A program made the translations under genes and the position numbers. This document shows positions 5,219 through 34,127 of a stretch of DNA of 64,000 bases, piece by piece. The notes under the pieces were generated by a model. That model was not told the origin of the DNA. It worked only from the letters and a program-made list of their open reading frames with translations, and did not search any database. Origin of the DNA: Ramazzottius varieornatus. Its lineage: Eukaryota; Animalia; Tardigrada. The first letter of the stretch is position 1; each line of letters opens with the position of its first letter. The stretch spans positions 2,787,826-2,851,825 of the forward strand of contig BDGG01000002.1 in NCBI GenBank assembly GCA_001949185.1. The letters are read 5' to 3'.

Positions 5219-8200
5219 TTATTATTTTATTATTATTCGCTTTACTCGTCTTAAATCGCCAGCAAACAAAAGCAGAGCCTTGTAGGCAAAATTTGGCAAG
5301 AGAGCCTTAGAGAAAAAGGTAGATCAGGTAACAAATAGCACAGATCGCTACAACAAACAACTATCGATATTTTTCTTACACCATTCAAAATTTCTCACAT
5401 CCAGTTTTGTTATGTAACGTCTAAAAGCAGATAGGCTAAGGCAGTCAGCTACAGAAGGGGACAAAAGGCGATCATTGACAAGAGAAGAAGCTACGTATGC
5501 AAAGGAATCGGCAGAGACATTCCAGATATCTTTCTGTTTCAGCGTCGTTGTGGGCTTCATCCTGAATCGATGGTCGCATCCGGCCCTCAGTGCTTGGTTC
5601 CTCGTGGTAGGTCTTTGTGAAGCTGACTCTTGCGGCGCTGCACTGCTTGGGAGGTGTCCATCAGGAAAGTTATTAGCCCAGATCTTATACGCATTAACAA
5701 TCGCTGCTTTGCATCAACGCTGCCACAAGTATTCCCACTGCACTTCAGCCAGGTGCTGACGGTACTGGCTGAAATCGCTATCGTGTTGCTTGATCCTTAC
5801 TCAACCTGATGCTCTTGAGGAAATCTTTTTGGACTTGCTCGAGCTGTTTTTGAAGAGTCTTTGATGAGGGATTCCAGACAGAAATTGCATACTCAGCAAC
5901 ACTCCGAGAAAGACTCTTGAATAGCATCTGTCTTGCAGCGCCCATCTGCACCGGGACGAACGTCTTGATGGCATGGAGTCTTTTGCCGCACTTGGAAGTT
6001 ATCGCGTCAACGTGAACAGTCCAACTCAGCCTCCTATCTACTATAACGCCCAGGCAGGTGGCTCGACTTACCGCAGGGATCTTTTCCTGGTTGATCGAAT
6101 AGCTATCGCCAGACACGGCGATGCTCCGCTTCGCTTGAAGGTAAACCGCACGTGCTGCGACTTGGTCGGGTTAAGGCTGAGGCCGGCTTTCGAACAGTTC
6201 TCTCCCAGCTGGTCGAGGTTTGCTTGGAAGTTGAGGCAGTCTTCGGCACTACTCACCACTTGGTACATCACAACAACATCAGCGTACTGGTACATTGGAC
6301 AACTGATTGAGCGTGACAGCCCATTGACAGCTAAGATGAAGAATAGTGGACCTAACACTGAACGCTGAGGTACTCCGGAGCGCACTTACTGTACTCACTG
6401 TAGTAGCCGCCCACAGTGACTCGCTGTTTCCTCCCCCGCCCATAGTCCGACAATAGTGCCAGCACGTCCACTACAATGCCATGGTTCTCCAGACTTTCGA
6501 TCAGCACTTCGTGAGGAACCCTGTCGAAAGCTTTGGTACAGTCAAGGAAAACTGCATCCACTTCTTTCTTTGCCGAAAGAGCTTGACTCCACCGGTGGAC
6601 CATGTGCATAAAGCTGCGATTCCGTCGATCTCCTGGACTTGTTTGTCCGAAAACAAACTATTGCGCTCTAGAAAGGAGGACACTTGGATAGCAATGATCT
6701 TCTCGAAAATTTTAGAGAGAGGTGGTAACAGCGAGATAGGTTTCCAAGTGGCGCCGCCTTTCTTTCGAATCGGGACTACATCGGCTCGCTTCCAGGAGGA
6801 TGGTAACTGCTTTGTCTGGAGGAACAGGTTGAGCAGGCGTACGAGAGAAAAGGAGAGTGACGTGCCTGCAGCCCTTATTAACGCATTCGTGATGAGTGAC
6901 GAGCCAGCTGCCTTCTTTACTGGGAGATTCTTCAGCACACTCCACACGGTGGCAGTTGAGACTGGTGGTAGTTGAAACCGGGGGCTGGTGGTCGCTACCG
7001 GCTGCCTGCTGTCAGTTCGGTGGTTTCTGCAGTGGTCGTTGCAGTCTCGGTATTCTTTCAGGAAGACACGGGCGATGAAGTCAGCTTTGGCTTTCGGATG
7101 GACTATGTACTTGTCGACTGAGTCAGCTACTGGAATTGGAGGAAGGCTTTCCGACTTTGTTCATGCTTCCACACGGCGTCTGGATTACGGCGTGATGATG
7201 TGGCTATGTTACGCAGGTATCTCGTCTTTGCTGCCCTCTTTGATATCCTCGCACATTCGACCCATCTTGTGAAGGCGCTCATCTCTTTTGACCTATTCCA
7301 CAGACGGAAAGCCGCATCGCGTCTCTTAAGACTGTCAACAGTCCGTGACGAGAGCGATGGTCTTGTTAGGCGTTTCGAGCTGATCATCTTCAGTCTGAAG
7401 TGTCGTCGCGCGATCTCTATCAGTTTGGCTTCAAAGCAGGCAGTGGCCAGGTCAGAGTTACACTGTACCGTAAAAAATCGTTTCCAGTCGACAGCACGTA
7501 TGTCCTTTCTGAGCTGGGTGACGTCACCAGTATCGAAAATCCAGGTTGGTCTCGGAGGTGATGGGAAGCTGCAAGTCCATAAATCCACGAACCACTGTAT
7601 CCCAGCATGATCATTCTTACTTGACGGTGGAGGCACAATGGAGACACAGCGTACTAGGCTCAGTTGACTGACGAAAACCAGGTCCAGGCATGAGCAGGAC
7701 GTCTTGCGTTGTCGCGTGTCACCTCTCACTCTTTGGAATATCGCAAACTCCTTAATGACGGACACCAACTCCCGCGTGCGTCTTGTCTTCACCGATGTTT
7801 CTTCGATGCTGTAGTCGGGACAGTTGAAGTCCCCAAGAAGAACTAGATTCCGTCGAAGGCGAGGTGGTATCAGCTGCAGCGACGTTCGTAGCTTCGTGAA
7901 GACATCCAGATCGTAGCCCGGGGCATACAGTACACCAACGAGAAGGTTCGTTCTAACACTAATAAATTTCACCCAAAGGAGCTCCAGACTTTCCTCATAC
8001 TCGGCACCAGACTCCACACTTCATACTCGGCTGCACTGATGGTTTGCAGCTCTTTCTTACAGATGAGAGTGACGCCTCCTCCGTTCTCTTTCTGGCAACC
8101 TGTCCTGGCTTTCCTGTGAACATCAAAAAGGTCCAAATCAGCAATCAACGCGTCCGCCACACTGTCATCGGCCATAGTTTCAACGAAGGCACCGATATCG

Positions 8201-8745: not shown

Positions 8746-8949
8746 AAGTTCCCAACCCTTGAATTACTCCCTGTGACTCCGAATGCAATGCTATAGCCTT
8801 ATCTCCTCCTTTTGTGACCTACTTTCGCTTCTGCTCAGTCACATTCCATTCACAAGCTCTTCTCCATTAATGTTGCACTTCGCATTTCACTGGGCAAAGT
8901 TCAGCAGAGGGGTTCAAACTAAGGTTCTAAATTCGTAATTTCAACCCTT

Positions 8950-25009: not shown

Positions 25010-27363
25010 TGACTTACGCCTATACTGCGCGCTGCATACAGCATTATACTTATATCTGCTTCTCAAAACATTGTACTTCCTTTTTGGGTTTTCAGCCTGT
25101 TGGCTTCTTTTTCCTGGGTATACTGCTTGCTTCCTGTTTTAACCGTCTAGTAATGTGAGTCCATGGTTCCTTTGTGTCGTCGACAAATCTCTTCATCCCA
25201 GTCAGGTGTTCAAAATTACGTAGAGCCTTACTCGAAGTTGAACATTTCGATTTTTCAGCATTCATCACTCATAGACATACGGAAAGAACAAGCTGTCGTC
25301 CAAGGAGCCCCGGTTTTTTCCAAGCCTATTCTTCTGAGACCAACGTATCAATGTCTCACAATCTTCAGAGTGGGCTGCAAACGCTCGTTGAAACCACGTA
25401 CACTATTGCATATCCGCTCACCTAACAAAGCGGTGGTCGGAAGCTTTGTCAAATTATCGATACCACCCCTTGGCAGATGACCTTCTGGACTATAAATGGA
25501 ATATAAATGTGCAGACGGTATCCTTGCCGACTAGTAATGTTGCGGTGCTCCACGTTTCGGCATTGCATATACTCCGATGCTACGAGCTGTTCGGCGGTTT
25601 TGAAACATTACCGCTTTTCGTCCACTTATTAACTCTGGCCACCACGAGCTCAACAAGGTAGAATGGGTTCTTGACCATTTCAAGCTGGAAAATCGATCGC
25701 ACCCAAGGAAATCTCACCGTGGGAAGAGAAAATTTATCCCTAATACTTTTTGAAAATTTTCTACGGTTGAACTCTCAATTTACCGTATTTTCCGCCTGTT
25801 CCAAACATTCCTGCGCGTACGTAATAAGATACGACTGAAAACTTACCGCTGCGGTTTAGAGCATGTTTGTATTTCCAGATATTTTTCTTTGTGATAAACA
25901 AGACCTGTCGTTACGCTCTGACGAAAGGACTTTTCCATGTTGGTAGAGTAGAAAGCTAGGTGAACCCCGAATCGCGGGACCGACCACGTCTGGAAACAGT
26001 AAGCCAAAGAGTGAAGAAGATTAGTGGGGGTGCTGCCGAAAATCGAGATCGCTGGAGTGAACCTCTCTTGAGTCTCTTCATCTGTGTTACTCTGCGCATA
26101 CTCGAACAGTCCGGTCGCTCGAGATGAACTGCTGAAACCAAGAATCAATCGAGAGGGCAATTGATGACTTTGCCGTCGTTTCCGCCTGTTCCATTTTACT
26201 GTCCCATATTTACCCATCGTGCGTGTACCCTTGCTCGTTCACCTCAGTCAGAGTGAAACAAAACTGTCTCTAGTGTGTTCACTGCAATATAGGCTTCTGT
26301 ACATGCTCGTTCGAGGCCGTATTGAGGGCGGGGGGAAGAGTAACTCTGCAATTGCGAACTTTTCCGGTTTTAAAGATTGCGGATCTGCAATTTTTTAAGA
26401 CGCACCTTGGGAAAATTGCAGATCTGCAATTCCGGAGAAGGTGTTTTTCAGAAATTGCTGACCTGCATATTTCTGGAATTTTTTTATAATTACAGGATGC
26501 GCGGGTTACAGATGGGATTTGCGCAAGACGAAGTCACGTGGTTTGCCGCATTGGCCAGTGAAACCTCGTGACACACACTCGCTGAACTCAGAGCCGAGCC
26601 ACGCTTTCACTCATCGTTCGAGTCGAGTAAATCATGTTGGTACGTTGTCTTCGGCTGATTAAAGTCCCAACATGGAGACCTTGATTCGTTTCCGGTAAAC
26701 ATTTACCGCTTTCGGGAAATTTCAAATTTTCCGAGGAGATTTTCTCCCGTACAACAGTACTGTAGTTTGCCTCTTAGATTCTCCTCTTCCGTCATTGCGC
26801 TTCTGAAACGTTATCTTGTTATCTTTGCAGAGACGATCGAAGGAGTCTTGGACCAGTACGATCAAATATTCTCGGAAGCCTTGGTAATATACAACTCTAT
26901 TTGTTTCTCCTGTCGTGGTAGGTCGTACGGTACAGAGCGTGACGTCAGTATCAACATCCAAATAGAAAAAAAAGTAGCAATTGACGAACCAAGCTTGGCA
27001 TAAGTTGTATCATGTCATGCCCTTCACCACCTGGTCTACCATAACAGACACGAGTGAAGAGTCGGGAAAAAACTATTTATTGTGTCTTTCTACAGTGATC
27101 ATTTTGTGATGGCTACTCTACCTGCAGTAAGTATTTGTAATGTTGTCGGGGGCGCTTAATGCTGTGAAACTATTGGCCATACACCAAGTCGGCGGTCGGA
27201 ATTCGTCGTGTCAGCCAACGGAACATATTTAAAACTTTAATCCGCCGTAAATTTTCGACAAATTCCCAATGGCCAAAAGTTCAAATACAACATACGTGCC
27301 CGTATGTTGTATTTCTGGTGCTCGAAAGGGCTACTGAAGAACGTAATTCTAATGAAATTGCAG

Positions 27364-28176
27364 AATCATCAAACCATCCTTCCGCCCTTTGGTCTTCCGG
27401 CCGACAATATCCCAATGTTAGGTCATTGGATGGGGGAACATTATGTGGTTGCTCATACGGTCTACAAGACACTTCCCTATGTAGACCAGTATGAAGCTGA
27501 CCCCATTCTTCAAGAAGTCACGGTGAAAGGTCAGACCAAGACTGTAAAAAGAGCCGAGCATGGGACTTCGGGGGACCAGATTTCAGCAATTGGGAACTCC
27601 CGTGCGCCCCCATTAATATACAAGATGAACCGCATTGATGGGTCCATGGTGTTCGCTAGCAGTTGGTCGGGAGGCGGCTCATACGAAACCATTTTCCTCA
27701 CAACAAGATACCTGGACATGGGAATAGGCCAGCGGGCGGTTATCTTCATTTTCGGCATAAACGATATTATCGAACACTACAACCATCCATCTCACTTCCA
27801 CCTCACAAACCAGGAGTGGGAGCGCCATTCGACCTTGATGATGAGACCTCTAAGAGACTTCCTTGTAGAGTATCGCCACAAGTTTAACTCTCTTTTCGCC
27901 ACGGATGTCTTCCCCGTTACCGCAGCGTATGGGTCAGTCGGTAGCAGTTACAAGGCGGATCGGATCGACCACATTGTCGCTCGGTACAATGTTCATCTGC
28001 GAGACTTAATTGAGAGTTTCGGGGGTGAATCCATTCTTACCGGGCTCCAGCCCGGTAAGAATAGTGTCCACCTTCAACAAGTGAGAAACGGGCCTTTGGA
28101 GCAGAAGCCTAAGATCCTGTTTGCTCATATGGTCCGCGATGTTTTTTACGCTTCTTTTAAGCGCAACCATAATTAA
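27364..28176 (+). CDS. SGNH/GDSL-hydrolase-like protein (terminal exon; upstream small exons probably from about 26670)
   Basis: Uninterrupted ORF (27304-28176) with SGNH-like blocks in the correct order: ISAIGNSR (I), SWSGG (II), VIFIFGINDI (III), KNSVHL (V). Acceptor ttgcag at 27363; AATAAA at the stop. Confidence 0.6.
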   Translation, partial: NHQTILPPFGLPADNIPMLGHWMGEHYVVAHTVYKTLPYVDQYEADPILQEVTVKGQTKTVKRAEHGTSGDQISAIGNSRAPPLIYKMNRIDGSMVFASSWSGGGSYETIFLTTRYLDMGIGQRAVIFIFGINDIIEHYNHPSHFHLTNQEWERHSTLMMRPLRDFLVEYRHKFNSLFATDVFPVTAAYGSVGSSYKADRIDHIVARYNVHLRDLIESFGGESILTGLQPGKNSVHLQQVRNGPLEQKPKILFAHMVRDVFYASFKRNHN

Positions 28177-28411
28177 TAAAGTACGTCGGACAGTATGTGC
28201 GGATGGTTGGTGACTCTGTATTGTTACATACAGTCACGAATGTTTTGCAGCCTGAAAAAAGAAGATCTCAGCAACCGGTTCCAGCCACCAAACTCCTTGC
28301 ACATACCAGTGTGTGAACTGTGACGAAACTGTTACTCATTTCTGCTGGGAACCTCGAACAGTAAGGTCTTGAAAACTACCCACAGTTTCTTCCGACAAAT
28401 ATATTGTTTTA

Positions 28412-30445
28412 GATTTGCGCATTAACTGATATCACGGGCTCGCCATCAGATCCTTACAATACGCCTCAAAAGGAGCCTAGAAGCAAAGCTCATGAGTACC
28501 TTGAAAATTATCCCAGCAGAGGTTTATTGGATACGACGCCGCGTAAGCAGAACTTGTTCTGCAAGCCATGCGGGAAGACGATCAAAGTAACGGAATACTT
28601 CCAGCCTTACACCGTCACGAGGCATTGTAAAACATCCAAACATGACGCGAATATCGCGAACTACATCTTAACGCAGAAAGAGGAGTCTCCTGAGCGATCA
28701 GCACCAGCTAAATCAAAGGCTTTCTGTGAGCATTGCAATATGCTCGTGCTTCTCAGATCTCCAGCGACCATACTTCGACACCAGGCTTTCAAGAAACATC
28801 AGACAATGGTAGCACAGCGACAGAAAAATTCGGTTGAGCCCTAGCGGTCCATGCGTCCAAAGAAGGCCAATCAAACCATCATCAAAAGCTGGGTTCGTTC
28901 TCTTGCGAAAACTGGCCATGCTTTCGAGATCAGCAATCATTTTCAAGACTCCCTACACACGTGTATGGAAGGTGGCGGCTGCATACCGAAAGCCAACACT
29001 TTGCGAAAAAATTATATACCAAAGCTTGCCCAGGATGAGATAGAACGCCGAAAAGTTTTGTTCAAAGGTAACCGTGATGATCGCATCTTGGCGGCCCCTT
29101 ACTTTTGTTTGTTTTCAGGCAAGAAGTTCACTTTGGCTGTAGATGCTTCCAAGGTTGCCCATAAGCACTGCATGTCCACCGTCATCATCTCAGAAGGGTC
29201 AGCCAAGGGAATGCTCATCGATCTTGATTTTCCAACGCAGTCCATTGATGAGAATTACATAGCTCGTCTCATGAAGTACGTCATGGCTTTCTATAAGTTA
29301 GAACCCAGCAACTGCGTTGAATTCGTCTGCGATGGACATTCAGCTAACAGAAGGGCTTTCAATCTGTACTTGAGGAAAGTCATTCGCAACGCGACCTACA
29401 TGACTTGTTTCGCACATATATGGAACAATGTCCACAAAGGCTTTGTAGATTCCATGCCACAGATCAACAAATTCCTTTCGTTGGCCAAGATGCCGTTTGC
29501 GAACTCTGATCAACGTGCACTGGCTTGGCACCTTTTTCTCGAAGACAGGGGAGTATTCAGAGCAAGGCCCGTGTTTTACGTCGCGAGCAGATGGTCGACC
29601 TGGCTCAAGAGCGCAAAATACTGGTTGCAGCACTTCGATCGTTTCACTGAGTTCATCAGCAAGGTGGACAGCACGGCTCAATGCGTGAAAGATTTGAAAG
29701 ACCTCCTAAGAGACGATCGTCAGTCTTCAGTCGTGAAATTTCAGCTGAATCTTCTGGATATGTTAGCTGTACCCTTGGAATCAGAACTTGCCAAGTGCGA
29801 GTCCAACTCCTTTTCTTCAGCCCCTTCCGTTCTTCAGGACGTCACCAAAATGCAGGAGTTTTTTAGCCAAGCGAAAGTTGAAGCTCAGGACACCAAGTAC
29901 ATGCCTGAGAGTGAGCTCTTCAGGGATGAACCAACTATGTTCGATTGTGCGAGGGCAGAGTTCAGAACAGCGCTGATGAAGGCTTCGAAGAGACTTTCGA
30001 ATCTCACAAGCACCGATCCAATGTTTCGCCACCCTGGGGCCAGCTTCCTTGAAGCCGTTCAGATTTTCAGTCCGATCGCCTCAAGGAACAAGCTTCCAGG
30101 CCTCAGTCATACAGATATAAAACGTTGGAAAGGTCATTTGAAATGTGTGAAAGATGTTACATCAGATGAGTAGGCAGATTACATCAGGATGATTAAAGAG
30201 CACCCGAAACATCAGAAACACGCCAGAGATCGTCGACTTAGATGGTTACTGGAAGGAAATGACGGTGGAATTTCCGAACCTCTCAAAGGTGGCGTTACTC
30301 AACATCTGGTTAACCGTTAATTCAGTTGAGGTAGAAAGAGGTTTCAGCTATATGAATACGTTCCCTTGGACCGAGGCGAGGTCAGCTGACTGAGAAGAAC
30401 ATAGCGTGCTTAATGTTCTTTTGCTTCAACGTTAGAGACAGGTCC
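28412..30445 (+). pseudogene. hAT transposase pseudogene (two N-terminal C2H2/BED-like zinc fingers + DDE + dimerisation domain)
   Basis: LFCKPC..RHCKTSKH and AFCEHC..RHQAFKKH fingers; FTLAVDAS (D), FVCDGHSAN (D), CFAH (CxxH), SRW, and C-terminal YWKE...FPNLSKVAL...SVEVERGFS (E). In-frame TAG at 28842 and 30171, plus late frameshifts. Confidence 0.88.
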
Positions 30446-30582
30446 TCTAACGATGTGATCAGGCGTTTTATATTTTAAAGAGTGTACTGACTTATCCTAT
30501 TTTAGACTACTGTAAACAGACTTATCAAATCATTGGCCCCCACAGAAGGAATGAAATTCAGAGAAAGTTAAATATTGCAAAA

Positions 30583-30720
30583 GGGATGGGCGAAAGCCCT
30601 GCTCCACAGAAAGAACAATCAAGGGTTCAGCGAAGGCTGAGCTCTAGGAAAGGAGGGGCGAAAGCCCTACCTTTGGGGTGGATCTGGAAAACTCATGCAC
30701 TTTGATCCGATCAAAGTGCA
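30583..30720. other. Cluster of four stem-loops
   Basis: gggcgaaagccc (30588-30599), agggttcagcgaaggctgagctct (30622-30645), aggaggggcgaaagccctacct (30651-30672), tgcactttgatc-c-gatcaaagtgca (30696-30720). Confidence 0.8.
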
Positions 30721-31143
30721 AGAGTTCTCTGGTCCCACCCGGGCGCCGGTGCTGTAGGTAGTGAATTCAACTTTAATATAGAAATATTTTGTAAAGGGTG
30801 CACCGGCCCCATGGTCCTCTCCGACTGGAGGCTTCACGCGCCGAGGACTGGGTGAGTCTTTGGACTTAGCGGATGCCAGTCGCCCCACGCTGTGAAAAAA
30901 TGTATTATTCTCGATCACAACAACCAATCAATACATCACCAACTTGTTCGCAGTGTCGAGAACGACTTGGATGTGATTCAGCTGATTTTCACCTATGTAC
31001 AGCATGGTGACGTGGAGTTTTGTGCCGTACAGCTTGCCAACGGCGGATGAAAAATTTAGTTTCAACATTTTTGGAATCTTGTCCTCTTCTCGGTTGCTGC
31101 TGCTCTTTTTTTTCAGGTATGTGATCTCATTTCGTTGTTCATC

Positions 31144-31694
31144 CTGAGTGGACGCGGAGAAGGAGGCAAGTCCCGATCCAGCCGCGCTGGACTGCAGTTG
31201 CCCGTTGATCGATCCAGAAAAGCTCCGCAAAAGAAACTAAGCTGAACGGGTTGTTGCTGGCGCTCCCGTCTACCTGGCTGCTGTCCTTGAGTACCTCGCT
31301 GCCGATGTCCTGGAGTTGGCTGGAAACGCTGCTCGCGACAACAAGAAGTCTGGCATCATTCCCCGTCATTTGCAGCTCGCCATCCGGAACGACGAAGAGG
31401 TAAGCCGTTTCAGTTCAATCAACATATACCCGGTCTAACGGTTGACCGGATTTGTTCTAATATTTCCCCTTGTTCAACTTGCAGTTGAACAAGCTTCTGT
31501 TCGGAGTGACCATCGCTCAAGGTGGTGTCTTGCCGTACATCGCACTTACGCTTCTGCGCAAGAAGACTGGAGACTCGGCCATGGCTCAGGACAAGGGTGA
31601 GAAAGCCTCGGCTGGTAGTGGAGACCGCAAGAAGGGAGGAAAGGCCAAGCTGCCGCCGAATTTCAGGAAGCCTGAAGTTCGTTTTTCTTCCTAA
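31144..31694 (+). pseudogene. H2A: Histone H2A pseudogene with one intron (31400-31484) and an extended C-terminal tail
   Basis: SGRGEGGKSRSSRAGLQLPV.. (frameshift, TAA) ..[53 protein letters not shown]|LNKLLFGVTIAQGGVLP..RKKTG plus a tail of about 40 aa. CTG stands where the ATG is expected. Confidence 0.9.
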
Positions 31695-32366
31695 CTGGCT
31701 TTTCCTGTTGTACCACCGAAAAATTGTTGCCTTTCCGTTTTAGTTCGTCCGTGTATATTGTGTACAGTTCGAAAATCTTAGAATTTGTCATATCACGAAA
31801 GTCGGATTTCTTTCGTTATTTTGCTATAAAATAAGCTGGTTTCACCTTTGAAGTGCTATTGATGGCGGAATATTCGCGAGGTTAGTTTCTTCTCACACAT
31901 ATAACCCTTTTCGTAATTAAAACGGTCCCCTTACAGCAACGTCGGATTAAATCGGGAGGCCCTACGCAGGTTAACGGGTGAATGTTTTGGACTTTGAAGA
32001 GTTCTCAAGCCTTCTCGGTGCGCGAGTTCACTAGAGCAGTGAGTTATGGTACAGTGGCGCAATAAAAGGAACCGTAAGCCAACAGGGTACGCGACTCGAT
32101 CGGGGGAGACGCATGAGTGGTACGGGCTATATGAGTCACAGCTCAATTTAATGACTCAACGTGTGCACGGGCAGGTCATTGGCTGCACTTATACCCAGCG
32201 CATGCACAACTCCTCCTATTTTAAATGCGGCGACTTTTCATGGCGACGTCGTCTTGCTCGCATCACACCTGTAGCGCGGGTGGTTCTGAGCCGACTTTGA
32301 AGGAGTAACAGAGCTGAATTTGCAGCACGCTCATGCGCGAAGTACAGTGACTGACTGACTGTACAG

Positions 32367-32532
32367 CAGAGCCCTGCAGCAGTAACCCGTGCTGCTTCTG
32401 CACTGCATCCGGTTTCCAGAATCTGCAACTGCACTGCATCTGCATTTTCTCACCATTTCGGCGACTGCAACCGCGCTGCATTGCAGTAAAATGCAGTACA
32501 GTACAGAATGTACTGCATGTTGTAGCGCTCTA
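32367..32532. mobile_element. Small hAT MITE nested in the 6.6-kb element
   Basis: Perfect 8-bp TSD ctgtacag; TIRs cagagccctgcagca / tgttgtagcgctcta; CTGCA-rich interior. Confidence 0.8.
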
Positions 32533-34127
32533 CTGTACAGGTGGGACGCGAGCTAGCGACGTCGCCACTTTTATTTTCTGTGTACAGATGCCGGTTTTTT
32601 TTTGATTTCTCGTAACTTTTTGCCATACATTTGATTTTTCTTACGTTTGTATCCATCAAAATACCTAACTGTCACCTCTCAACTCCCGAAATACAGGGTA
32701 ACGCAACTAAGTCCGCATAAGACTTCCTCGTCAAATTATCAGTCGAACAACAGCCCGAACAAATATCATTTGAATAGCACCGAAATTGCCCACAGCAATT
32801 TCAAGAAGCTCACCAAAAAAATATTGCGGATCTGCTATTTTGAGCAGTATCCTAGAAAAAAATTGCGGATCTGCAAAGTTTGCGATGTTCCGCCAACCTC
32901 AGTACGTCCTTGGGCTCGTTCAAACACTGGAAAAGTCCAATCCCACAATCCAGCGTAGAAAGACAAGACAGGAAGGAATTTTCCTGTTGATCATGAGTTA
33001 TCCCTTGATTGACTAGGGAATAATTTTGTGACTTCAGTTCCGCCGTTGATTTTGGACATCATTGATTGACAGGGCTATGTGTATCAACGCGCACTTTTAA
33101 TCCAGTAAACACACCAGAGGCAGTATTGTTTCACTCCGGTTACATTTAAAGCAGAGTGCAGACCACCGTTTGACGGCGCGATTTGGTATGCAGCGTACCA
33201 CACCTCGATGACGTCACTACCAGTATATCAGCGACAACTAGACTGTTATTAACGGTGATAATACAGTTTAGAATACTTTGCGCTAAACGTTGCGCGTCAT
33301 CAGCGTCGAGTTTGTTTTATCAATCACACTTAATTCCGTCTACAAATTTTAGTGCAGCCATGTGATTGTTTGCCCTGTAAACCAACTCCGATCATGCAGA
33401 CTGCACGTCAAACAATAACATTGTTTCTGGTTTGGTACCGTTCAGTACCTGCTCACTTACCGTCGATAGCTTATAAACCATATTCTCTGCCCAAGTCGGC
33501 GGTTTTAAAGATCTGTCCCGTTTTCTCGATAAGATGTTCGTCTAAATTTAGGCGAAGTTTGTCAGCCACCATTATAATTTCCAGAAGGCGGTGGTATGTC
33601 GTCTAGTGTTATTTTGTTGCTCGCTTACCTTGGAAAAGAGCCAGGATGCACCTGCCAGCTAACTCTGTAGACTCGCCCTGACCAAAAGTTTCGATGAGCT
33701 TACTTCCTCCACCAAGGTTCAATGTCTCCCCGGTAGGACGTGCAATCGTACCTGACTTCATTAGCTATCTCAGTTTTGACTGGTCCTGGCCACAAAATGA
33801 TGAACGCCACACTGTGTGATTTCAGTTTCACTCTGTCACGAAAGGCCGAAAAGATTTCTGATGAAATCTTTCTGAAAGAAACCTGAGAAGGAAGGTACAT
33901 GCAGTATCTACCGCAGCTTTCCCGATTCCATAGGCTGGAGTTCCTTCATACTTCTTCCCGCCCACGGATAAGATACTGACGATCAAGCCCGACCTCTGTT
34001 TGATCGATTGCCGCATGATCGATGCTGCTTTGGCGGCACAGGTATAATGATTTCTCTAAGCATTGCAGAACGATCGACATATTAATTTTGTAATTGCTTT
34101 TGTTCGGTGAGCATACAATGTACTTTT

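What the first reader, a model, noticed from the sequence alone, without database searches (positions are those of the whole stretch)
26312..32912. Cargo-carrying hAT transposon: SGNH-like gene + transposase + intron-containing histone H2A within one TIR/TSD pair
Seen in sequence: TIRs (13/16), an 8-bp TSD (tgctcgtt/ggctcgtt) and shared subterminal attgcggatctgc motifs bracket 6.6 kb. Inside, all on the + strand, are an SGNH-like gene, a two-zinc-finger hAT transposase, a hairpin cluster and an H2A gene. Established: hAT elements make 8-bp TSDs and typically encode only a transposase. Inference: this may be a multi-gene hAT lineage carrying accessory genes (a possible esterase and a chromatin protein), or a Pack-type capture of host DNA. 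The retained H2A intron argues for DNA-level capture rather than retroposition.
Basis: partly seen in the sequence, partly recalled or inferred. Interest (0 to 1): 0.82.

Follow-up and report, generated by a model that had tools for sequence, protein, structure and literature searches.

The report
Nested tardigrade hAT transposon with extra parts
The 6.6-kb "element" is four cut-and-paste transposons nested in one another in a tardigrade genome. The genes sit in an inner, dead 5.8-kb hAT transposon whose family carries a transposase, a second esterase-like gene, a likely self-cleaving RNA and a broken copy of a host histone H2A gene.

Summary
Genome: Ramazzottius varieornatus (tardigrade).

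The 13/16 TIR, the (t/g)gctcgtt duplication and the attgcggatctgc motifs are the ends of a ~650-bp hAT-like MITE family. That family carries no genes.

**This MITE copy has three relationships:**
- It lies inside a ~285-bp MITE.
- It was hit by a 166-bp mini-MITE.
- It was hit by the gene-bearing unit, a 5,767-bp hAT element at 26507-32273. This has TIRs starting TACAG and a perfect 8-bp duplication, GCGCGGGT.

**The inner element recurs.** Copies lie on contigs C3 (own duplication), C13 and C6. A diverged full-length subfamily copy (C1b, 6,269 bp) has the same order:
- an SGNH-fold ORF1;
- a zinc-finger hAT transposase;
- a conserved hairpin block ending in a candidate HDV-like ribozyme (30813-30882);
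- a histone H2A segment with intron and UTRs, copied from the host histone cluster at C2:7.83 Mb.

**State of the parts.**
- Between subfamilies, the transposase (dN/dS about 0.09) and ORF1 (pN 0.33, pS 0.88) evolved under constraint.
- The H2A copy has no ATG in any copy and is broken in the window.
- Every transposase copy found is broken.

**Verdict.** The single 6.6-kb element is wrong. The idea of a multi-part hAT lineage with DNA-level H2A capture is supported. The scan had noted the same module on other DNA of this genome (s1-794868).

The parts
26242..26311 (.). Left part of the outermost ~285-bp MITE (layer A). Its 39-nt inverted repeat is 26251-26289 / 33098-33136.
   Evidence: Inverted repeat I1. 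In paralogues the left and right parts are contiguous, e.g. C1:5911632-5911701 followed by C1:5911705-5911920.
32921..33139 (.). Right part of the outermost MITE (layer A).
   Evidence: At least 15 copies at 72-90% identity.
26304..26311 (.). Target-site duplication of the layer-B MITE (TGCTCGTT). Its partner is GGCTCGTT at 32913-32920.
   Evidence: Read. Layer-A paralogues hold the site once, judged from match coordinates.
26312..26506 (+). TIR CAAGGACGTATTGAGG-type, with ATTGCGGATCTGCAA subterminal repeats.
   Evidence: Alignment with 6 paralogues, which have their own 8-bp TSDs.
32274..32912 (+). Right arm of the layer-B MITE, interrupted by the mini-MITE at 32367-32532.
26499..26506 (.). 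Target-site duplication of the inner hAT element (GCGCGGGT). Its partner is at 32274-32281 and the match is perfect.
   Evidence: Layer-B paralogues hold a single GCGCGGGT.
26507..32273 (+). Inner 5,767-bp hAT element (layer C). This is the unit that carries all the genes.
   Evidence: Own-genome search, copy mapping, ends and TSDs.
26507..26535 (+). Left TIR TACAGATGGGATTTGCGCAAGACGAAGTC. It matches the right TIR (32245-32273) at 23/29.
   Evidence: I2. The same ends occur in ~870-bp MITE derivatives, seven with perfect 8-bp TSDs.
32245..32273 (+). Right TIR (...GACGTCGTCTTGCTCGCATCACACCTGTA).
27304..28176 (+). ORF1: an SGNH/GDSL-fold protein of 290 aa, open in this copy. Block I reads GNS (family GDS) and block V reads NSVH (family DGVH).
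   Evidence: Motifs. AlphaFold2 pLDDT 76. Top Foldseek hits are all GDSL/SGNH esterases. Homologue at the same position in C1b, 52% aa identity.
28182..30476 (+). hAT transposase pseudogene, multi-exon. Stops at 28842 and 30171, and frameshifts near 30200 and 30390.
   Evidence: Three-frame read. Annotated fragments RvY_16332 and RvY_03331 in other copies.
28527..28841 (+). Two C2H2/U1-type zinc fingers at the N-terminal part of the transposase.
   Evidence: Pfam zf-U1: 20.8 bits here; 27.8 bits against a cut-off of 22 in the C13 copy's protein.
30238..30387 (+). hAT C-terminal dimerisation domain.
   Evidence: Pfam PF05699, 22.1 bits, cut-off 21.4.
30586..30812 (+). Conserved hairpin block: GNRA-loop hairpins (GGGCGAAAGCCC twice), the 30676-30740 palindrome, and a GC-rich long stem that ends 2 nt before the ribozyme cleavage site.
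   Evidence: D7 and I3. Consensus fold over 5 copies, 4 pairs with compensatory changes.
30813..30882 (+). Candidate HDV-like self-cleaving ribozyme. P1 GGUCCUC/GAGGACU (G.U at its base), P2 CGACUGG/CCAGUCG, P3 GGC/GCC, P1.1 GG, P4 UGAGUC/GACUUA, J4/2 GCGGAUG (C at 30870). Predicted cut between 30812 and 30813.
   Evidence: 94.7% of cells paired in 6 copies against 21-43% in slid controls. Strict descriptor: 1 hit in the window, 0 in 150 random 64-kb sequences. All 6 copies fit with 0-2 mismatches. No Rfam match.
31138..31853 (+). Host-derived histone H2A segment, a pseudogene. Ex-start codon CTG at 31144, exon 1 to 31399, intron 31400-31484, exon 2 from 31485, then 3' UTR.
   Evidence: 81% identical to C2:7826761-7827517 including intron and UTR. 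Pfam Histone_H2A_C 5.5e-13. Lesions.
32367..32532 (+). 166-bp mini hAT-type MITE (layer D). TIR CAGAGCCCTGCAGCA / TAGAGCGCTACAACA. Perfect TSD CTGTACAG (32359-32366 / 32533-32540).
   Evidence: Absent from all layer-B paralogues. Own copies elsewhere.

Best explanation
**A four-level nest of cut-and-paste DNA transposons in Ramazzottius varieornatus**

Order of events, shown by the nesting:
1. A ~285-bp MITE inserted.
2. A ~650-bp hAT-like MITE landed in it, duplicating (T/G)GCTCGTT.
3. Two further hAT-type elements landed in that MITE: a 166-bp mini-MITE (TSD CTGTACAG) and a 5.77-kb hAT element (TSD GCGCGGGT).

Only the 5.77-kb element is relevant to the cargo question.

**Family architecture, shown by two subfamilies**

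TIR, then SGNH-fold ORF1, then a zinc-finger hAT transposase, then a structured non-coding block ending in an HDV-like ribozyme motif, then a histone H2A transcription unit copied from the host histone cluster, then TIR.

**How it moved (inferred)**
- Movement was by ordinary hAT cut-and-paste. This is inferred from the 8-bp duplications of full-length and ~870-bp derivative copies.

**The coding parts**
- ORF1 and the transposase were functional genes of the element while the subfamilies diverged. This is shown by pN being far below pS.
- ORF1 is inferred to be an element-encoded esterase-like accessory protein.

**The H2A piece**
- It was picked up once at the DNA level: the intron is retained, and ATG>CTG, G37R and S>F are shared against all host paralogues.
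- It is a dead passenger with no start codon.

**The ribozyme (inferred, not shown)**
- It would cut the element's transcript 3' of the transposase ORF. The upstream product would end in a GC-rich hairpin.

**Current state**
- All full-length copies found are now broken, so the family appears extinct in this assembly.
For: **Nesting and empty sites**
-.

**Inner ends and TSDs**
- Window GCGCGGGT perfect; C3 7/8; C1b 7/8; seven ~870-bp derivatives perfect.

**Same gene order at unrelated loci**
-.

**hAT identity**
- 8-bp TSDs.
- PF05699 above its cut-off.
- 27% identity (E 2e-53) to a second hAT-like transposase family in the genome.
- All ten nearest named Atlas clusters are hAT/ZBED/DUF659 RNase-H-like domains (a lead only).

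**Selection**
- Transposase core between subfamilies: dN/dS 0.08-0.09.
- ORF1 between subfamilies: pN 0.33 against pS 0.88.
- Within a subfamily: 0.65-0.87.

**SGNH fold**
-.

**H2A origin and lesions**
-.

**Ribozyme**
-.
Against: - No intact transposase copy was found, so activity is historical only.
- ORF1 has no Pfam hit of its own. The window copy has lost the block-V Asp.
- Selection on ORF1 rests on one inter-subfamily comparison with saturated synonymous sites.
- H2A synonymous divergence between subfamilies (pS 0.29) is well below that of the transposase (0.65). The segments therefore do not share one simple history; recombination between subfamilies or conversion from host genes is needed.
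- The ribozyme has no Rfam match and no two-sided covariation, with only 6 close copies. Cleavage is untested.
- I could not look in other tardigrade genomes.
Confidence: 0.8

Rival explanations
1. One reading: one 6.6-kb cargo-carrying hAT element bounded by the 13/16 TIR and the (t/g)gctcgtt duplication.
For: The TIR, TSD and subterminal motifs are real, and they bracket the genes.
Against: - At least 6 other copies with these ends are ~650 bp long and gene-less. They carry the unoccupied GCGCGGGT site.
- The gene block has its own TIR/TSD and recurs on C3, C13, C6 and C1 without these ends.
Confidence: 0.03
2. ORF1 is only an old captured host gene, or a captured gene of another mobile element. 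On this view it hitch-hikes like H2A and is not an accessory protein used by the element.
For: - No known hAT needs a second protein (my knowledge).
- SGNH genes have been captured by other transposons, e.g. a Helitron in platyfish (PMC4021074).
- Weakly related genes exist in the genome (RvY_03494).
- The window copy has degenerate catalytic blocks.
Against: - ORF1 sits at the same position and in the same orientation in both subfamilies.
- pN 0.33 against pS 0.88 over 273 codons, with GDS/GIND/DGVH kept in C1b.
- A second repeat family has a 30%-identical SGNH ORF about 150 bp from an end that also starts TACAGA.
- Unlike H2A, no host parent with flanking similarity was found.
Confidence: 0.22
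3. The H2A segment is, or was, a working cargo. It would be translated without AUG, for instance by ribozyme-assisted internal initiation as proposed for R2 elements, or as a fusion such as the annotated RvY_07097.
For: - pN/pS is about 0.5 between subfamilies, below neutral.
- The histone-fold part stays open in C13 and C3.
- An HDV-like motif lies 260 nt upstream.
- A database model fuses a transposase fragment to H2A.
Against: - There is no ATG, and in-frame stops lie within about 30 codons upstream in every copy.
- Frameshifts or stops occur in the window, C3, C1a and C1b copies.
- RvY_07097 reads part of exon 1 out of frame, so it looks like a predictor's patch.
- Low pN/pS can come from conversion by host genes.
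Confidence: 0.07
4. The HDV-like motif is not a ribozyme. It is a conserved stem-rich DNA or RNA element, for example protein-binding sites or a 3' UTR structure, that happens to fit the descriptor.
For: - No Rfam family matches, even at E 10.
- No compensatory double changes.
- The minimum-free-energy z-score is not significant.
- The neighbouring hairpins are conserved too.
Against: - It fits all five helices, the G.U at the cut site, a UCC-type L3 in C1a/b and a GCGGAUG J4/2 (HDV has GCGAAUG, from memory).
- 0 strict hits in 150 random 64-kb sequences.
- The one-sided changes all keep pairing in P4 and P1.1.
Confidence: 0.3

Closest known systems
hAT transposons that captured histone H3 in Dothideomycete fungi (Pseudocercospora fijiensis, Pyrenophora tritici-repentis; PMC6710886, PMC3538342)
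   Same: A full-size hAT element (8-bp TSD, DUF659-type transposase) carries a core-histone sequence between the transposase and a TIR and multiplies it.
   Different: - Here the histone is H2A and the host is an animal.
- The intron and UTRs are retained, so capture was from genomic DNA. The fungal case is intron-less (a retrocopy).
- There are about 6 copies here, against tens to hundreds in the fungi.
- No RIP is involved.
- The element also carries an SGNH ORF and a ribozyme-like motif.
SGNH-type esterase domain of ORF1p in CR1/L2-type non-LTR retrotransposons (ZfL2-1; PMC3905857)
   Same: A mobile element encodes an SGNH-fold esterase-like protein upstream of its catalytic protein.
   Different: - That is a class I element, with the esterase fused to a coiled coil in ORF1p.
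- Here it is a stand-alone ~285-aa ORF in a class II hAT element.
- No detectable sequence similarity was shown here.
- Activity is untested.
HDV-like self-cleaving ribozymes of R2, RTE and L1Tc retrotransposons and of animal genes (my knowledge: Webb 2009; Eickbush and Eickbush 2010; Ruminski 2011)
   Same: The same nested double-pseudoknot layout, with G.U at the base of P1 and a C in J4/2, inside a mobile element.
   Different: - Those sit at the 5' end of retrotransposon RNA.
- This one lies 3' of a DNA-transposase ORF.
- A search for the phrase together with DNA transposon or hAT listed no paper holding "HDV-like ribozyme".
- It is not in Rfam.
Pack-MULE / Pack-TYPE transduplication (PMC8903248)
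   Same: A host gene fragment with its intron is copied between TIRs and moves with the element.
   Different: Pack elements are non-autonomous and mainly found in plants. Here the carrier kept its transposase gene.
Multi-gene DNA transposons (PIF/Harbinger, MuDR, CACTA; fungal DNA transposons with a TET/JBP gene, PMC12730594)
   Same: A second conserved protein-coding gene lies beside the transposase.
   Different: To my knowledge, hAT elements normally have one gene. The partner here is an esterase-like enzyme.

Membership tests
hAT superfamily | 8-bp target-site duplication | tested here: met
   Window GCGCGGGT 8/8; seven short derivatives 8/8; C3 7/8; C1b 7/8.
hAT superfamily | Short terminal inverted repeats | tested here: met
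   29-nt TIR, 23/29. The ends TACAGRTGGGATTTGCG... / ...CACACCTGTA are conserved in at least 10 copies.
hAT superfamily | Transposase with the C-terminal hAT dimerisation domain | tested here: met
   PF05699, 22.1 bits against a cut-off of 21.4, E 1.3e-4. This is borderline.
hAT superfamily | RNase-H-like DDE core of hAT type | tested here: inconclusive
   - No Pfam or PDB sequence hit for the core.
- CFAH and SRWS motifs seen by eye.
- The nearest Atlas clusters are all DUF659/ZBED/FAM200, scores 0.84-0.87, which counts as a lead only.
SGNH/GDSL hydrolase superfamily (ORF1) | Conserved blocks I, II, III and V with Ser, Gly, Asn and His | tested here: met
   The family alignment shows GDS / SSWSG / G[IV]ND / DG[IVL]H. 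The window copy reads GNS and NSVH: Ser and His are kept, the block-V Asp is lost.
SGNH/GDSL hydrolase superfamily (ORF1) | Three-layer alpha/beta/alpha SGNH fold | tested here: met
   AlphaFold2 pLDDT 76, pTM 0.78. 62 PDB matches at E<=1e-3. The listed top matches are mostly GDSL/SGNH esterases, target-normalised TM-score 0.5-0.62.
SGNH/GDSL hydrolase superfamily (ORF1) | Match to a curated family model above its cut-off | tested here: not met
   No Pfam hit for ORF1. Distant relatives give only sub-threshold Lipase_GDSL, Lipase_GDSL_2, SGNH and DUF459 hits.
SGNH/GDSL hydrolase superfamily (ORF1) | Esterase or lipase activity | not testable with these tools
   Needs an enzyme assay.
HDV-like ribozyme | Nested double pseudoknot (P1, P1.1, P2, P3, P4), with G.U at the cleavage site and a C in J4/2 | tested here: met
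   25 pairs, 94.7% of cells paired, slid controls 21-43%. Strict descriptor unique in the window, with 0 hits in 150 random sequences.
HDV-like ribozyme | Match to an Rfam HDV-type covariance model | tested here: not met
   No such hit at E<=1 over 7 kb or at E<=10 over 161 nt.
HDV-like ribozyme | Self-cleavage | not testable with these tools
   Needs in vitro transcription.
Transduplicated (Pack-type) host gene | A parent gene elsewhere, with similarity extending into intron and UTR | tested here: met
   C2:7826761-7827517, 81% identity, in an H4/H2B/H2A cluster.
Transduplicated (Pack-type) host gene | A non-autonomous carrier | tested here: not met
   The carrier holds a transposase gene, now broken.
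Functional histone H2A gene | Start codon and an uninterrupted reading frame | tested here: not met
   CTG or GTG replaces ATG in all six copies. In-frame stops lie upstream. The window has a frameshift and a TAA.

The most novel reading that the evidence does not exclude
This is an animal hAT lineage that is a true multi-component transposon. It encodes an SGNH esterase-like accessory protein kept under selection. It also uses an HDV-like self-cleaving ribozyme, preceded by protective hairpins, to form the 3' end of its transposase transcript. As far as I could find, that would be the first self-cleaving ribozyme reported as an integral part of a class II DNA transposon. The captured H2A unit is left as a cut-off downstream passenger.
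Probability: 0.35. Interest if true: 0.75.

Novelty: new variant of a known kind. Interest (0 to 1): 0.55.

Why it matters
**What is ordinary**
- hAT elements are textbook one-gene transposons.
- Nested insertions and dead copies are common.
- Capture of a core histone by a hAT element is already known from fungi.

**What would be new, if it holds**
- A hAT family whose second ORF is an SGNH-fold enzyme conserved under selection. This would parallel, in a DNA transposon, the unexplained esterase of CR1/L2 retrotransposon ORF1 proteins. It would give a second, independent system for asking what a lipid or ester hydrolase does for a mobile element.
- A conserved HDV-like ribozyme downstream of a transposase gene. 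This would extend ribozyme-based RNA processing from retrotransposons to cut-and-paste elements.

**Practical points**
- Naive TIR/TSD pairing can mis-bound elements in MITE-rich tardigrade genomes.
- The database entry RvY_07097 ("Histone H2A") is a chimeric gene model built on a dead transposon.

Tried and rejected
**Searches that gave nothing useful**
- Pfam and PDB sequence searches gave nothing for ORF1 or for the transposase core.
- The word-based protein search found only this species' own copies.
- Rfam found no family for the hairpin block or the ribozyme.

**Attempts that failed technically**
- The first AlphaFold2 model, from 7 sequences, was poor (pLDDT 46). It was replaced after the profile search supplied more homologues.
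- A global MAFFT alignment of the window element against C1b mis-aligned downstream of 30900, because C1b has a 1.4-kb insertion there. Local alignments were used instead.
- A plain MFE fold of the ribozyme is uninformative, since pseudoknots are not modelled (z -0.44).
- My first, loose ribozyme descriptor was too permissive (0.6 chance hits per 64 kb) and was tightened.
- A fuzzy-regex search timed out.

**Questions left open**
- I looked for a transposase next to the second SGNH-bearing repeat family (C10, C4, C15, C2, C18). None lay within the 3.5-kb loci or near hits of the second hAT family.
- I looked for the hAT target consensus in the TSDs. No nTnnnnAn or nnnTAnnn pattern is visible, so the clade is not assigned.

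**Idea rejected**
- Independent H2A captures in the two subfamilies, because of the shared ATG>CTG, G37R and S>F changes.

Full report
**1.

The window is contig C2:2787826-2851825 of a 55.8-Mb, 200-contig assembly. Proteins encoded by copies of this element are deposited as Ramazzottius varieornatus RvY_16333, RvY_16332, RvY_07097, RvY_07098 and RvY_03331. The genome is therefore that tardigrade's.

- a 13/16 TIR at 26312-26327 and 32897-32912;
- flanking tgctcgtt and ggctcgtt;
- ATTGCGGATCTGC(A) repeats at both ends;
- on the + strand, an open 290-aa ORF, zinc fingers, a hAT C-terminal domain, a hairpin block and an H2A-like segment with an intron.

**2. The 6.6 kb is a nest, not one element**

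A search of the whole genome with the 6.6 kb splits it into separate repeat families.

- Query positions 1-195, 5963-6053 and 6221-6601 recur together as ~650-bp copies on C1 (three copies), C4, C9 and C10.
- When the window's interior is removed, these copies align straight across the junction.
- They share the TIR CAAGGACGTATTGAGG... / ...CCTCAATACGTCCTTG and the subterminal ATTGCGGATCTGCAA repeats.
- They have their own flanks and 8-bp duplications; C4 has TTACTGTA on both sides.
- They contain a single GCGCGGGT where the window has GCGCGGGT, then 5,767 bp, then GCGCGGGT.

*Layer D, a mini-MITE.*
- The same paralogues lack window 32367-32532.
- This is a 166-bp mini-MITE with CAGAG/TAGAG-type TIRs, a perfect CTGTACAG duplication and its own copies elsewhere.

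*Layer A, the outermost MITE.*
Window 26242-26311 and 32921-33139 are contiguous in at least 6 other places, for example C1:5911632-5911920.
- They end in the 39-nt inverted repeat found.
The coordinates leave room for one copy of the 8-mer only.

**3. The gene-bearing unit**

Window 26507-32273 has 29-nt TIRs (TACAGATGGG... / ...CACACCTGTA, 23/29) and a perfect 8-bp duplication. Its ends recur in ~870-bp derivatives, seven of which have perfect 8-bp duplications.

Longer copies:

| Copy | Length and state | Identity to window | Notes |
|---|---|---|---|
| C3:1928452-1934670 | 6,219 bp | 91-97% | Both ends present; duplication CAACACGC/CAACAAGC |
| C13:895789-901390 | 3'-truncated; 500-bp deletion in the transposase | 94-96% | Different flanks |
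| C6:1972244-1974832 | 5'-truncated | 94% | Different flanks |
| C1b (C1:6506181-6512449) | 6,269 bp, diverged subfamily | 72-77% where alignable | Recognisable TIRs; G-rich 7/8 duplication |
| C1a (C1:9225610-9228488) | Partial, diverged subfamily | 73-76% | 5' part unknown |

In the window, C3, C13 and C1b copies the order is ORF1, then transposase, then hairpin block, then H2A. The C6 and C1a copies keep the part that survives.

**4. Transposase**

*Evidence for hAT identity:*
- It has two U1/C2H2-type zinc fingers.
- Its core carries CFAH and SRWS motifs. The core is 27% identical (E 2e-53) to a second, multi-copy hAT-like family of this genome.
- It has a hAT dimerisation domain just above Pfam's cut-off.
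- The protein atlas places the core among DUF659, ZBED and FAM200 hAT-type domains, at scores that count only as a lead.

*State of the copies:*
- The window copy has stops at 28842 and 30171 and at least two frameshifts.
- No copy in the genome is intact.

*Selection:*
- Between subfamilies the core has pN 0.12-0.13, pS 0.65-0.66 and dN/dS 0.08-0.09. Within the young subfamily dN/dS is 0.7-0.9.
- The gene therefore worked for most of the family's history, and the present copies decay neutrally.

*How it was searched:*
- I searched the transposase exon by exon, or ORF by ORF, by reference.

**5. ORF1**

*Relatives and motifs:*
- Pfam, PDB sequence and word-based searches were blank outside this species.
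- A profile search of 1.84 billion representatives found 13 relatives. Several are unnamed 280-285-aa proteins from metagenome or read-archive assemblies.
- The most distant relatives give sub-threshold Lipase_GDSL, Lipase_GDSL_2, SGNH and DUF459 hits.
- The alignment shows the four SGNH blocks: GDS, SSWSG, G(I/V)ND and DG(I/V/L)H.

*Fold:*
- With that alignment AlphaFold2 gives pLDDT 76 and pTM 0.78.
- Foldseek returns 62 PDB matches at E<=1e-3. They are led by GDSL/SGNH acylhydrolases, sialate O-acetylesterases and Axe2.
- "SGNH-like" is therefore confirmed at the level of fold and motifs.

*State and selection:*
- The window copy is open, but reads GNS in block I and NSVH in block V, so the catalytic Asp is lost.
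- The C3 and C1b copies keep GDS and DGVH.
- C1b carries the homologue at the same place with 52% identity, pN 0.33 against pS 0.88. That is far from neutral, so ORF1 was a selected gene of the element.

*A second family:*
- A second repeat family (five sampled copies, about 90% alike) has a 30%-identical SGNH ORF.
- That ORF lies about 150 bp from an end that also starts TACAGA.
- No transposase lies within reach.

**6. H2A**

*Origin:*
- The segment 31138-31853 is 81% identical to C2:7826761-7827517. The similarity covers part of the leader, both exons, the intron at the same position and about 260 bp of 3' UTR.
- That locus is a normal histone cluster with H4, and H2B divergent from H2A.

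*Lesions:*
- Five of the six element copies have CTG in place of ATG; C6 has GTG.
- All have in-frame stops within about 30 codons upstream and no alternative ATG.
- The young subfamily shares an 18-bp deletion.
- The window has in addition a 2-bp frameshift and TAA for Tyr.
- C1a and C1b have their own frameshifts and stops.

*One capture or two:*
- ATG>CTG, G37R and an S>F change near the C-terminus are shared by both subfamilies against all three host paralogues. This points to one capture.

*An unresolved discrepancy:*
- The H2A synonymous difference between subfamilies (0.29) is less than half that of the transposase (0.65).
- pN/pS is about 0.5, not 1.
- Later exchange of this segment between subfamilies, or conversion by host genes, would explain both. 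I could not decide between them.

*Method and annotation:*
- For this count only, codon columns were defined in a script across the two host exons. Nothing joined was searched.
- RvY_07097, named "Histone H2A" in UniRef, is a predictor's fusion of a transposase fragment, an out-of-frame stretch of exon 1 and the rest of H2A from the C3 copy.

**7. The hairpin cluster**

An earlier unchecked note of this scan, on another piece of the genome (s1-794868), mentioned GAAA hairpins and an HDV-like ribozyme after a hAT transposase. I tested this here.

*The hairpin block:*
- The block 30586-30882 is conserved between subfamilies, with four compensatory pairs.

*The last 70 nt (30813-30882) fit the HDV-like layout exactly:*
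- P1 is 7 bp and starts with G.U.
- P2 is 7 bp.
- P3 is 3 bp.
- L3 is 7 nt, UUCACGC here and UCCACGC in C1a/b.
- P1.1 is 2 bp.
- P4 is 6 bp.
- J4/2 is GCGGAUG.

*Tests:*
- Over six copies 94.7% of pair cells are standard pairs, against 21-43% when partners are slid. The seven further pair types seen are all one-sided changes that keep a standard pair, mainly in P4 and P1.1. A few cells are unpaired, for example in P3 and P4 of C1a/b.
- A strict descriptor hits once in the 64-kb window and never in 150 random sequences of the same size.
- All six copies fit with 0-2 mismatches.
- The 93-nt stretch containing the motif (30799-30891) is 86-89% identical between subfamilies. Synonymous sites of the transposase are 65% different.

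*Against:*
- No Rfam match.
- No two-sided covariation.
- No experiment.

I rate a real ribozyme at about 0.65.

*Possible role:*
- Its position is 340 nt after the transposase stop, directly after an 11-bp GC-rich stem and 260 nt before H2A.
- This suggests 3'-end formation of the transposase transcript. That is inference only.

**8. Comparison and verdict**

*Ordinary features:* the nested insertions, the dead copies, and the capture of a core histone by a hAT element, which has a fungal precedent for H3 (PMC6710886; PMC3538342).

*Unusual features:*
- a selected SGNH-fold second ORF in a hAT family, whose nearest analogue is the esterase of L2/CR1 ORF1p (PMC3905857);
- a conserved HDV-like motif in a class II element, for which my literature search found no precedent.

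*Limits of this work:*
- I could not examine other tardigrade genomes.

*Verdict:* observation partly confirmed; interpretation partly supported. This is a new variant of a known kind, of moderate interest.

Noticed in passing
window 26169-26229: A ~64-bp sequence just left of the outermost MITE recurs in more than 35 places in the genome at 80-88% identity, often as inverted pairs about 100-150 bp apart. It is probably another tiny MITE family.
   Followed up: no
L044-L048 (C10:184721, C4:702324, C15:12074, C2:7400383, C18:106645): A second repeat family (copies about 90% alike, more than 2.5 kb) carries a 30%-identical SGNH-like ORF about 150 bp from an end starting TACAGAAATCTTG. That is the same first six bases as the inner hAT TIR. 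No transposase was found within the 3.5-kb loci.
   Followed up: partly
C3 copy, L032:3453-9671 (protein P0003 = RvY_07097): The public protein RvY_07097, named "Histone H2A" in UniRef, is a chimeric gene model. It joins a transposase fragment, out-of-frame H2A exon 1 and the rest of H2A from a dead transposon copy. This is likely a misannotation.
   Followed up: partly
L035:7103-8843 (C1b copy): The diverged copy has about 1.4 kb of extra sequence between the ribozyme block and H2A. The C13 and C3 copies have about 380 bp extra right after the position matching window 26823, which is the same breakpoint at which the ~870-bp derivatives are deleted.
   Followed up: no
L036:1424-4518 (C2:7824423-7827517): The host histone cluster has H4 (with an intron), H2B and H2A. 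The H2A has an intron and a 40-aa tail ending in SQEA (H2A.X-like). Two paralogues (C2:7595901, C12:270030) have different tails.
   Followed up: no
L034, about 8795-8835 (C1:9227794-9227834): A run of N (masked or withheld letters) lies inside the C1a copy, just upstream of its hairpin block.
   Followed up: no
L056 (C12:875895-877262) and about 15 other places: A second, more numerous hAT-like transposase family is present, with copies 86-95% alike. One has a 456-aa open frame. It is 27-34% identical to the transposase studied here.
   Followed up: partly
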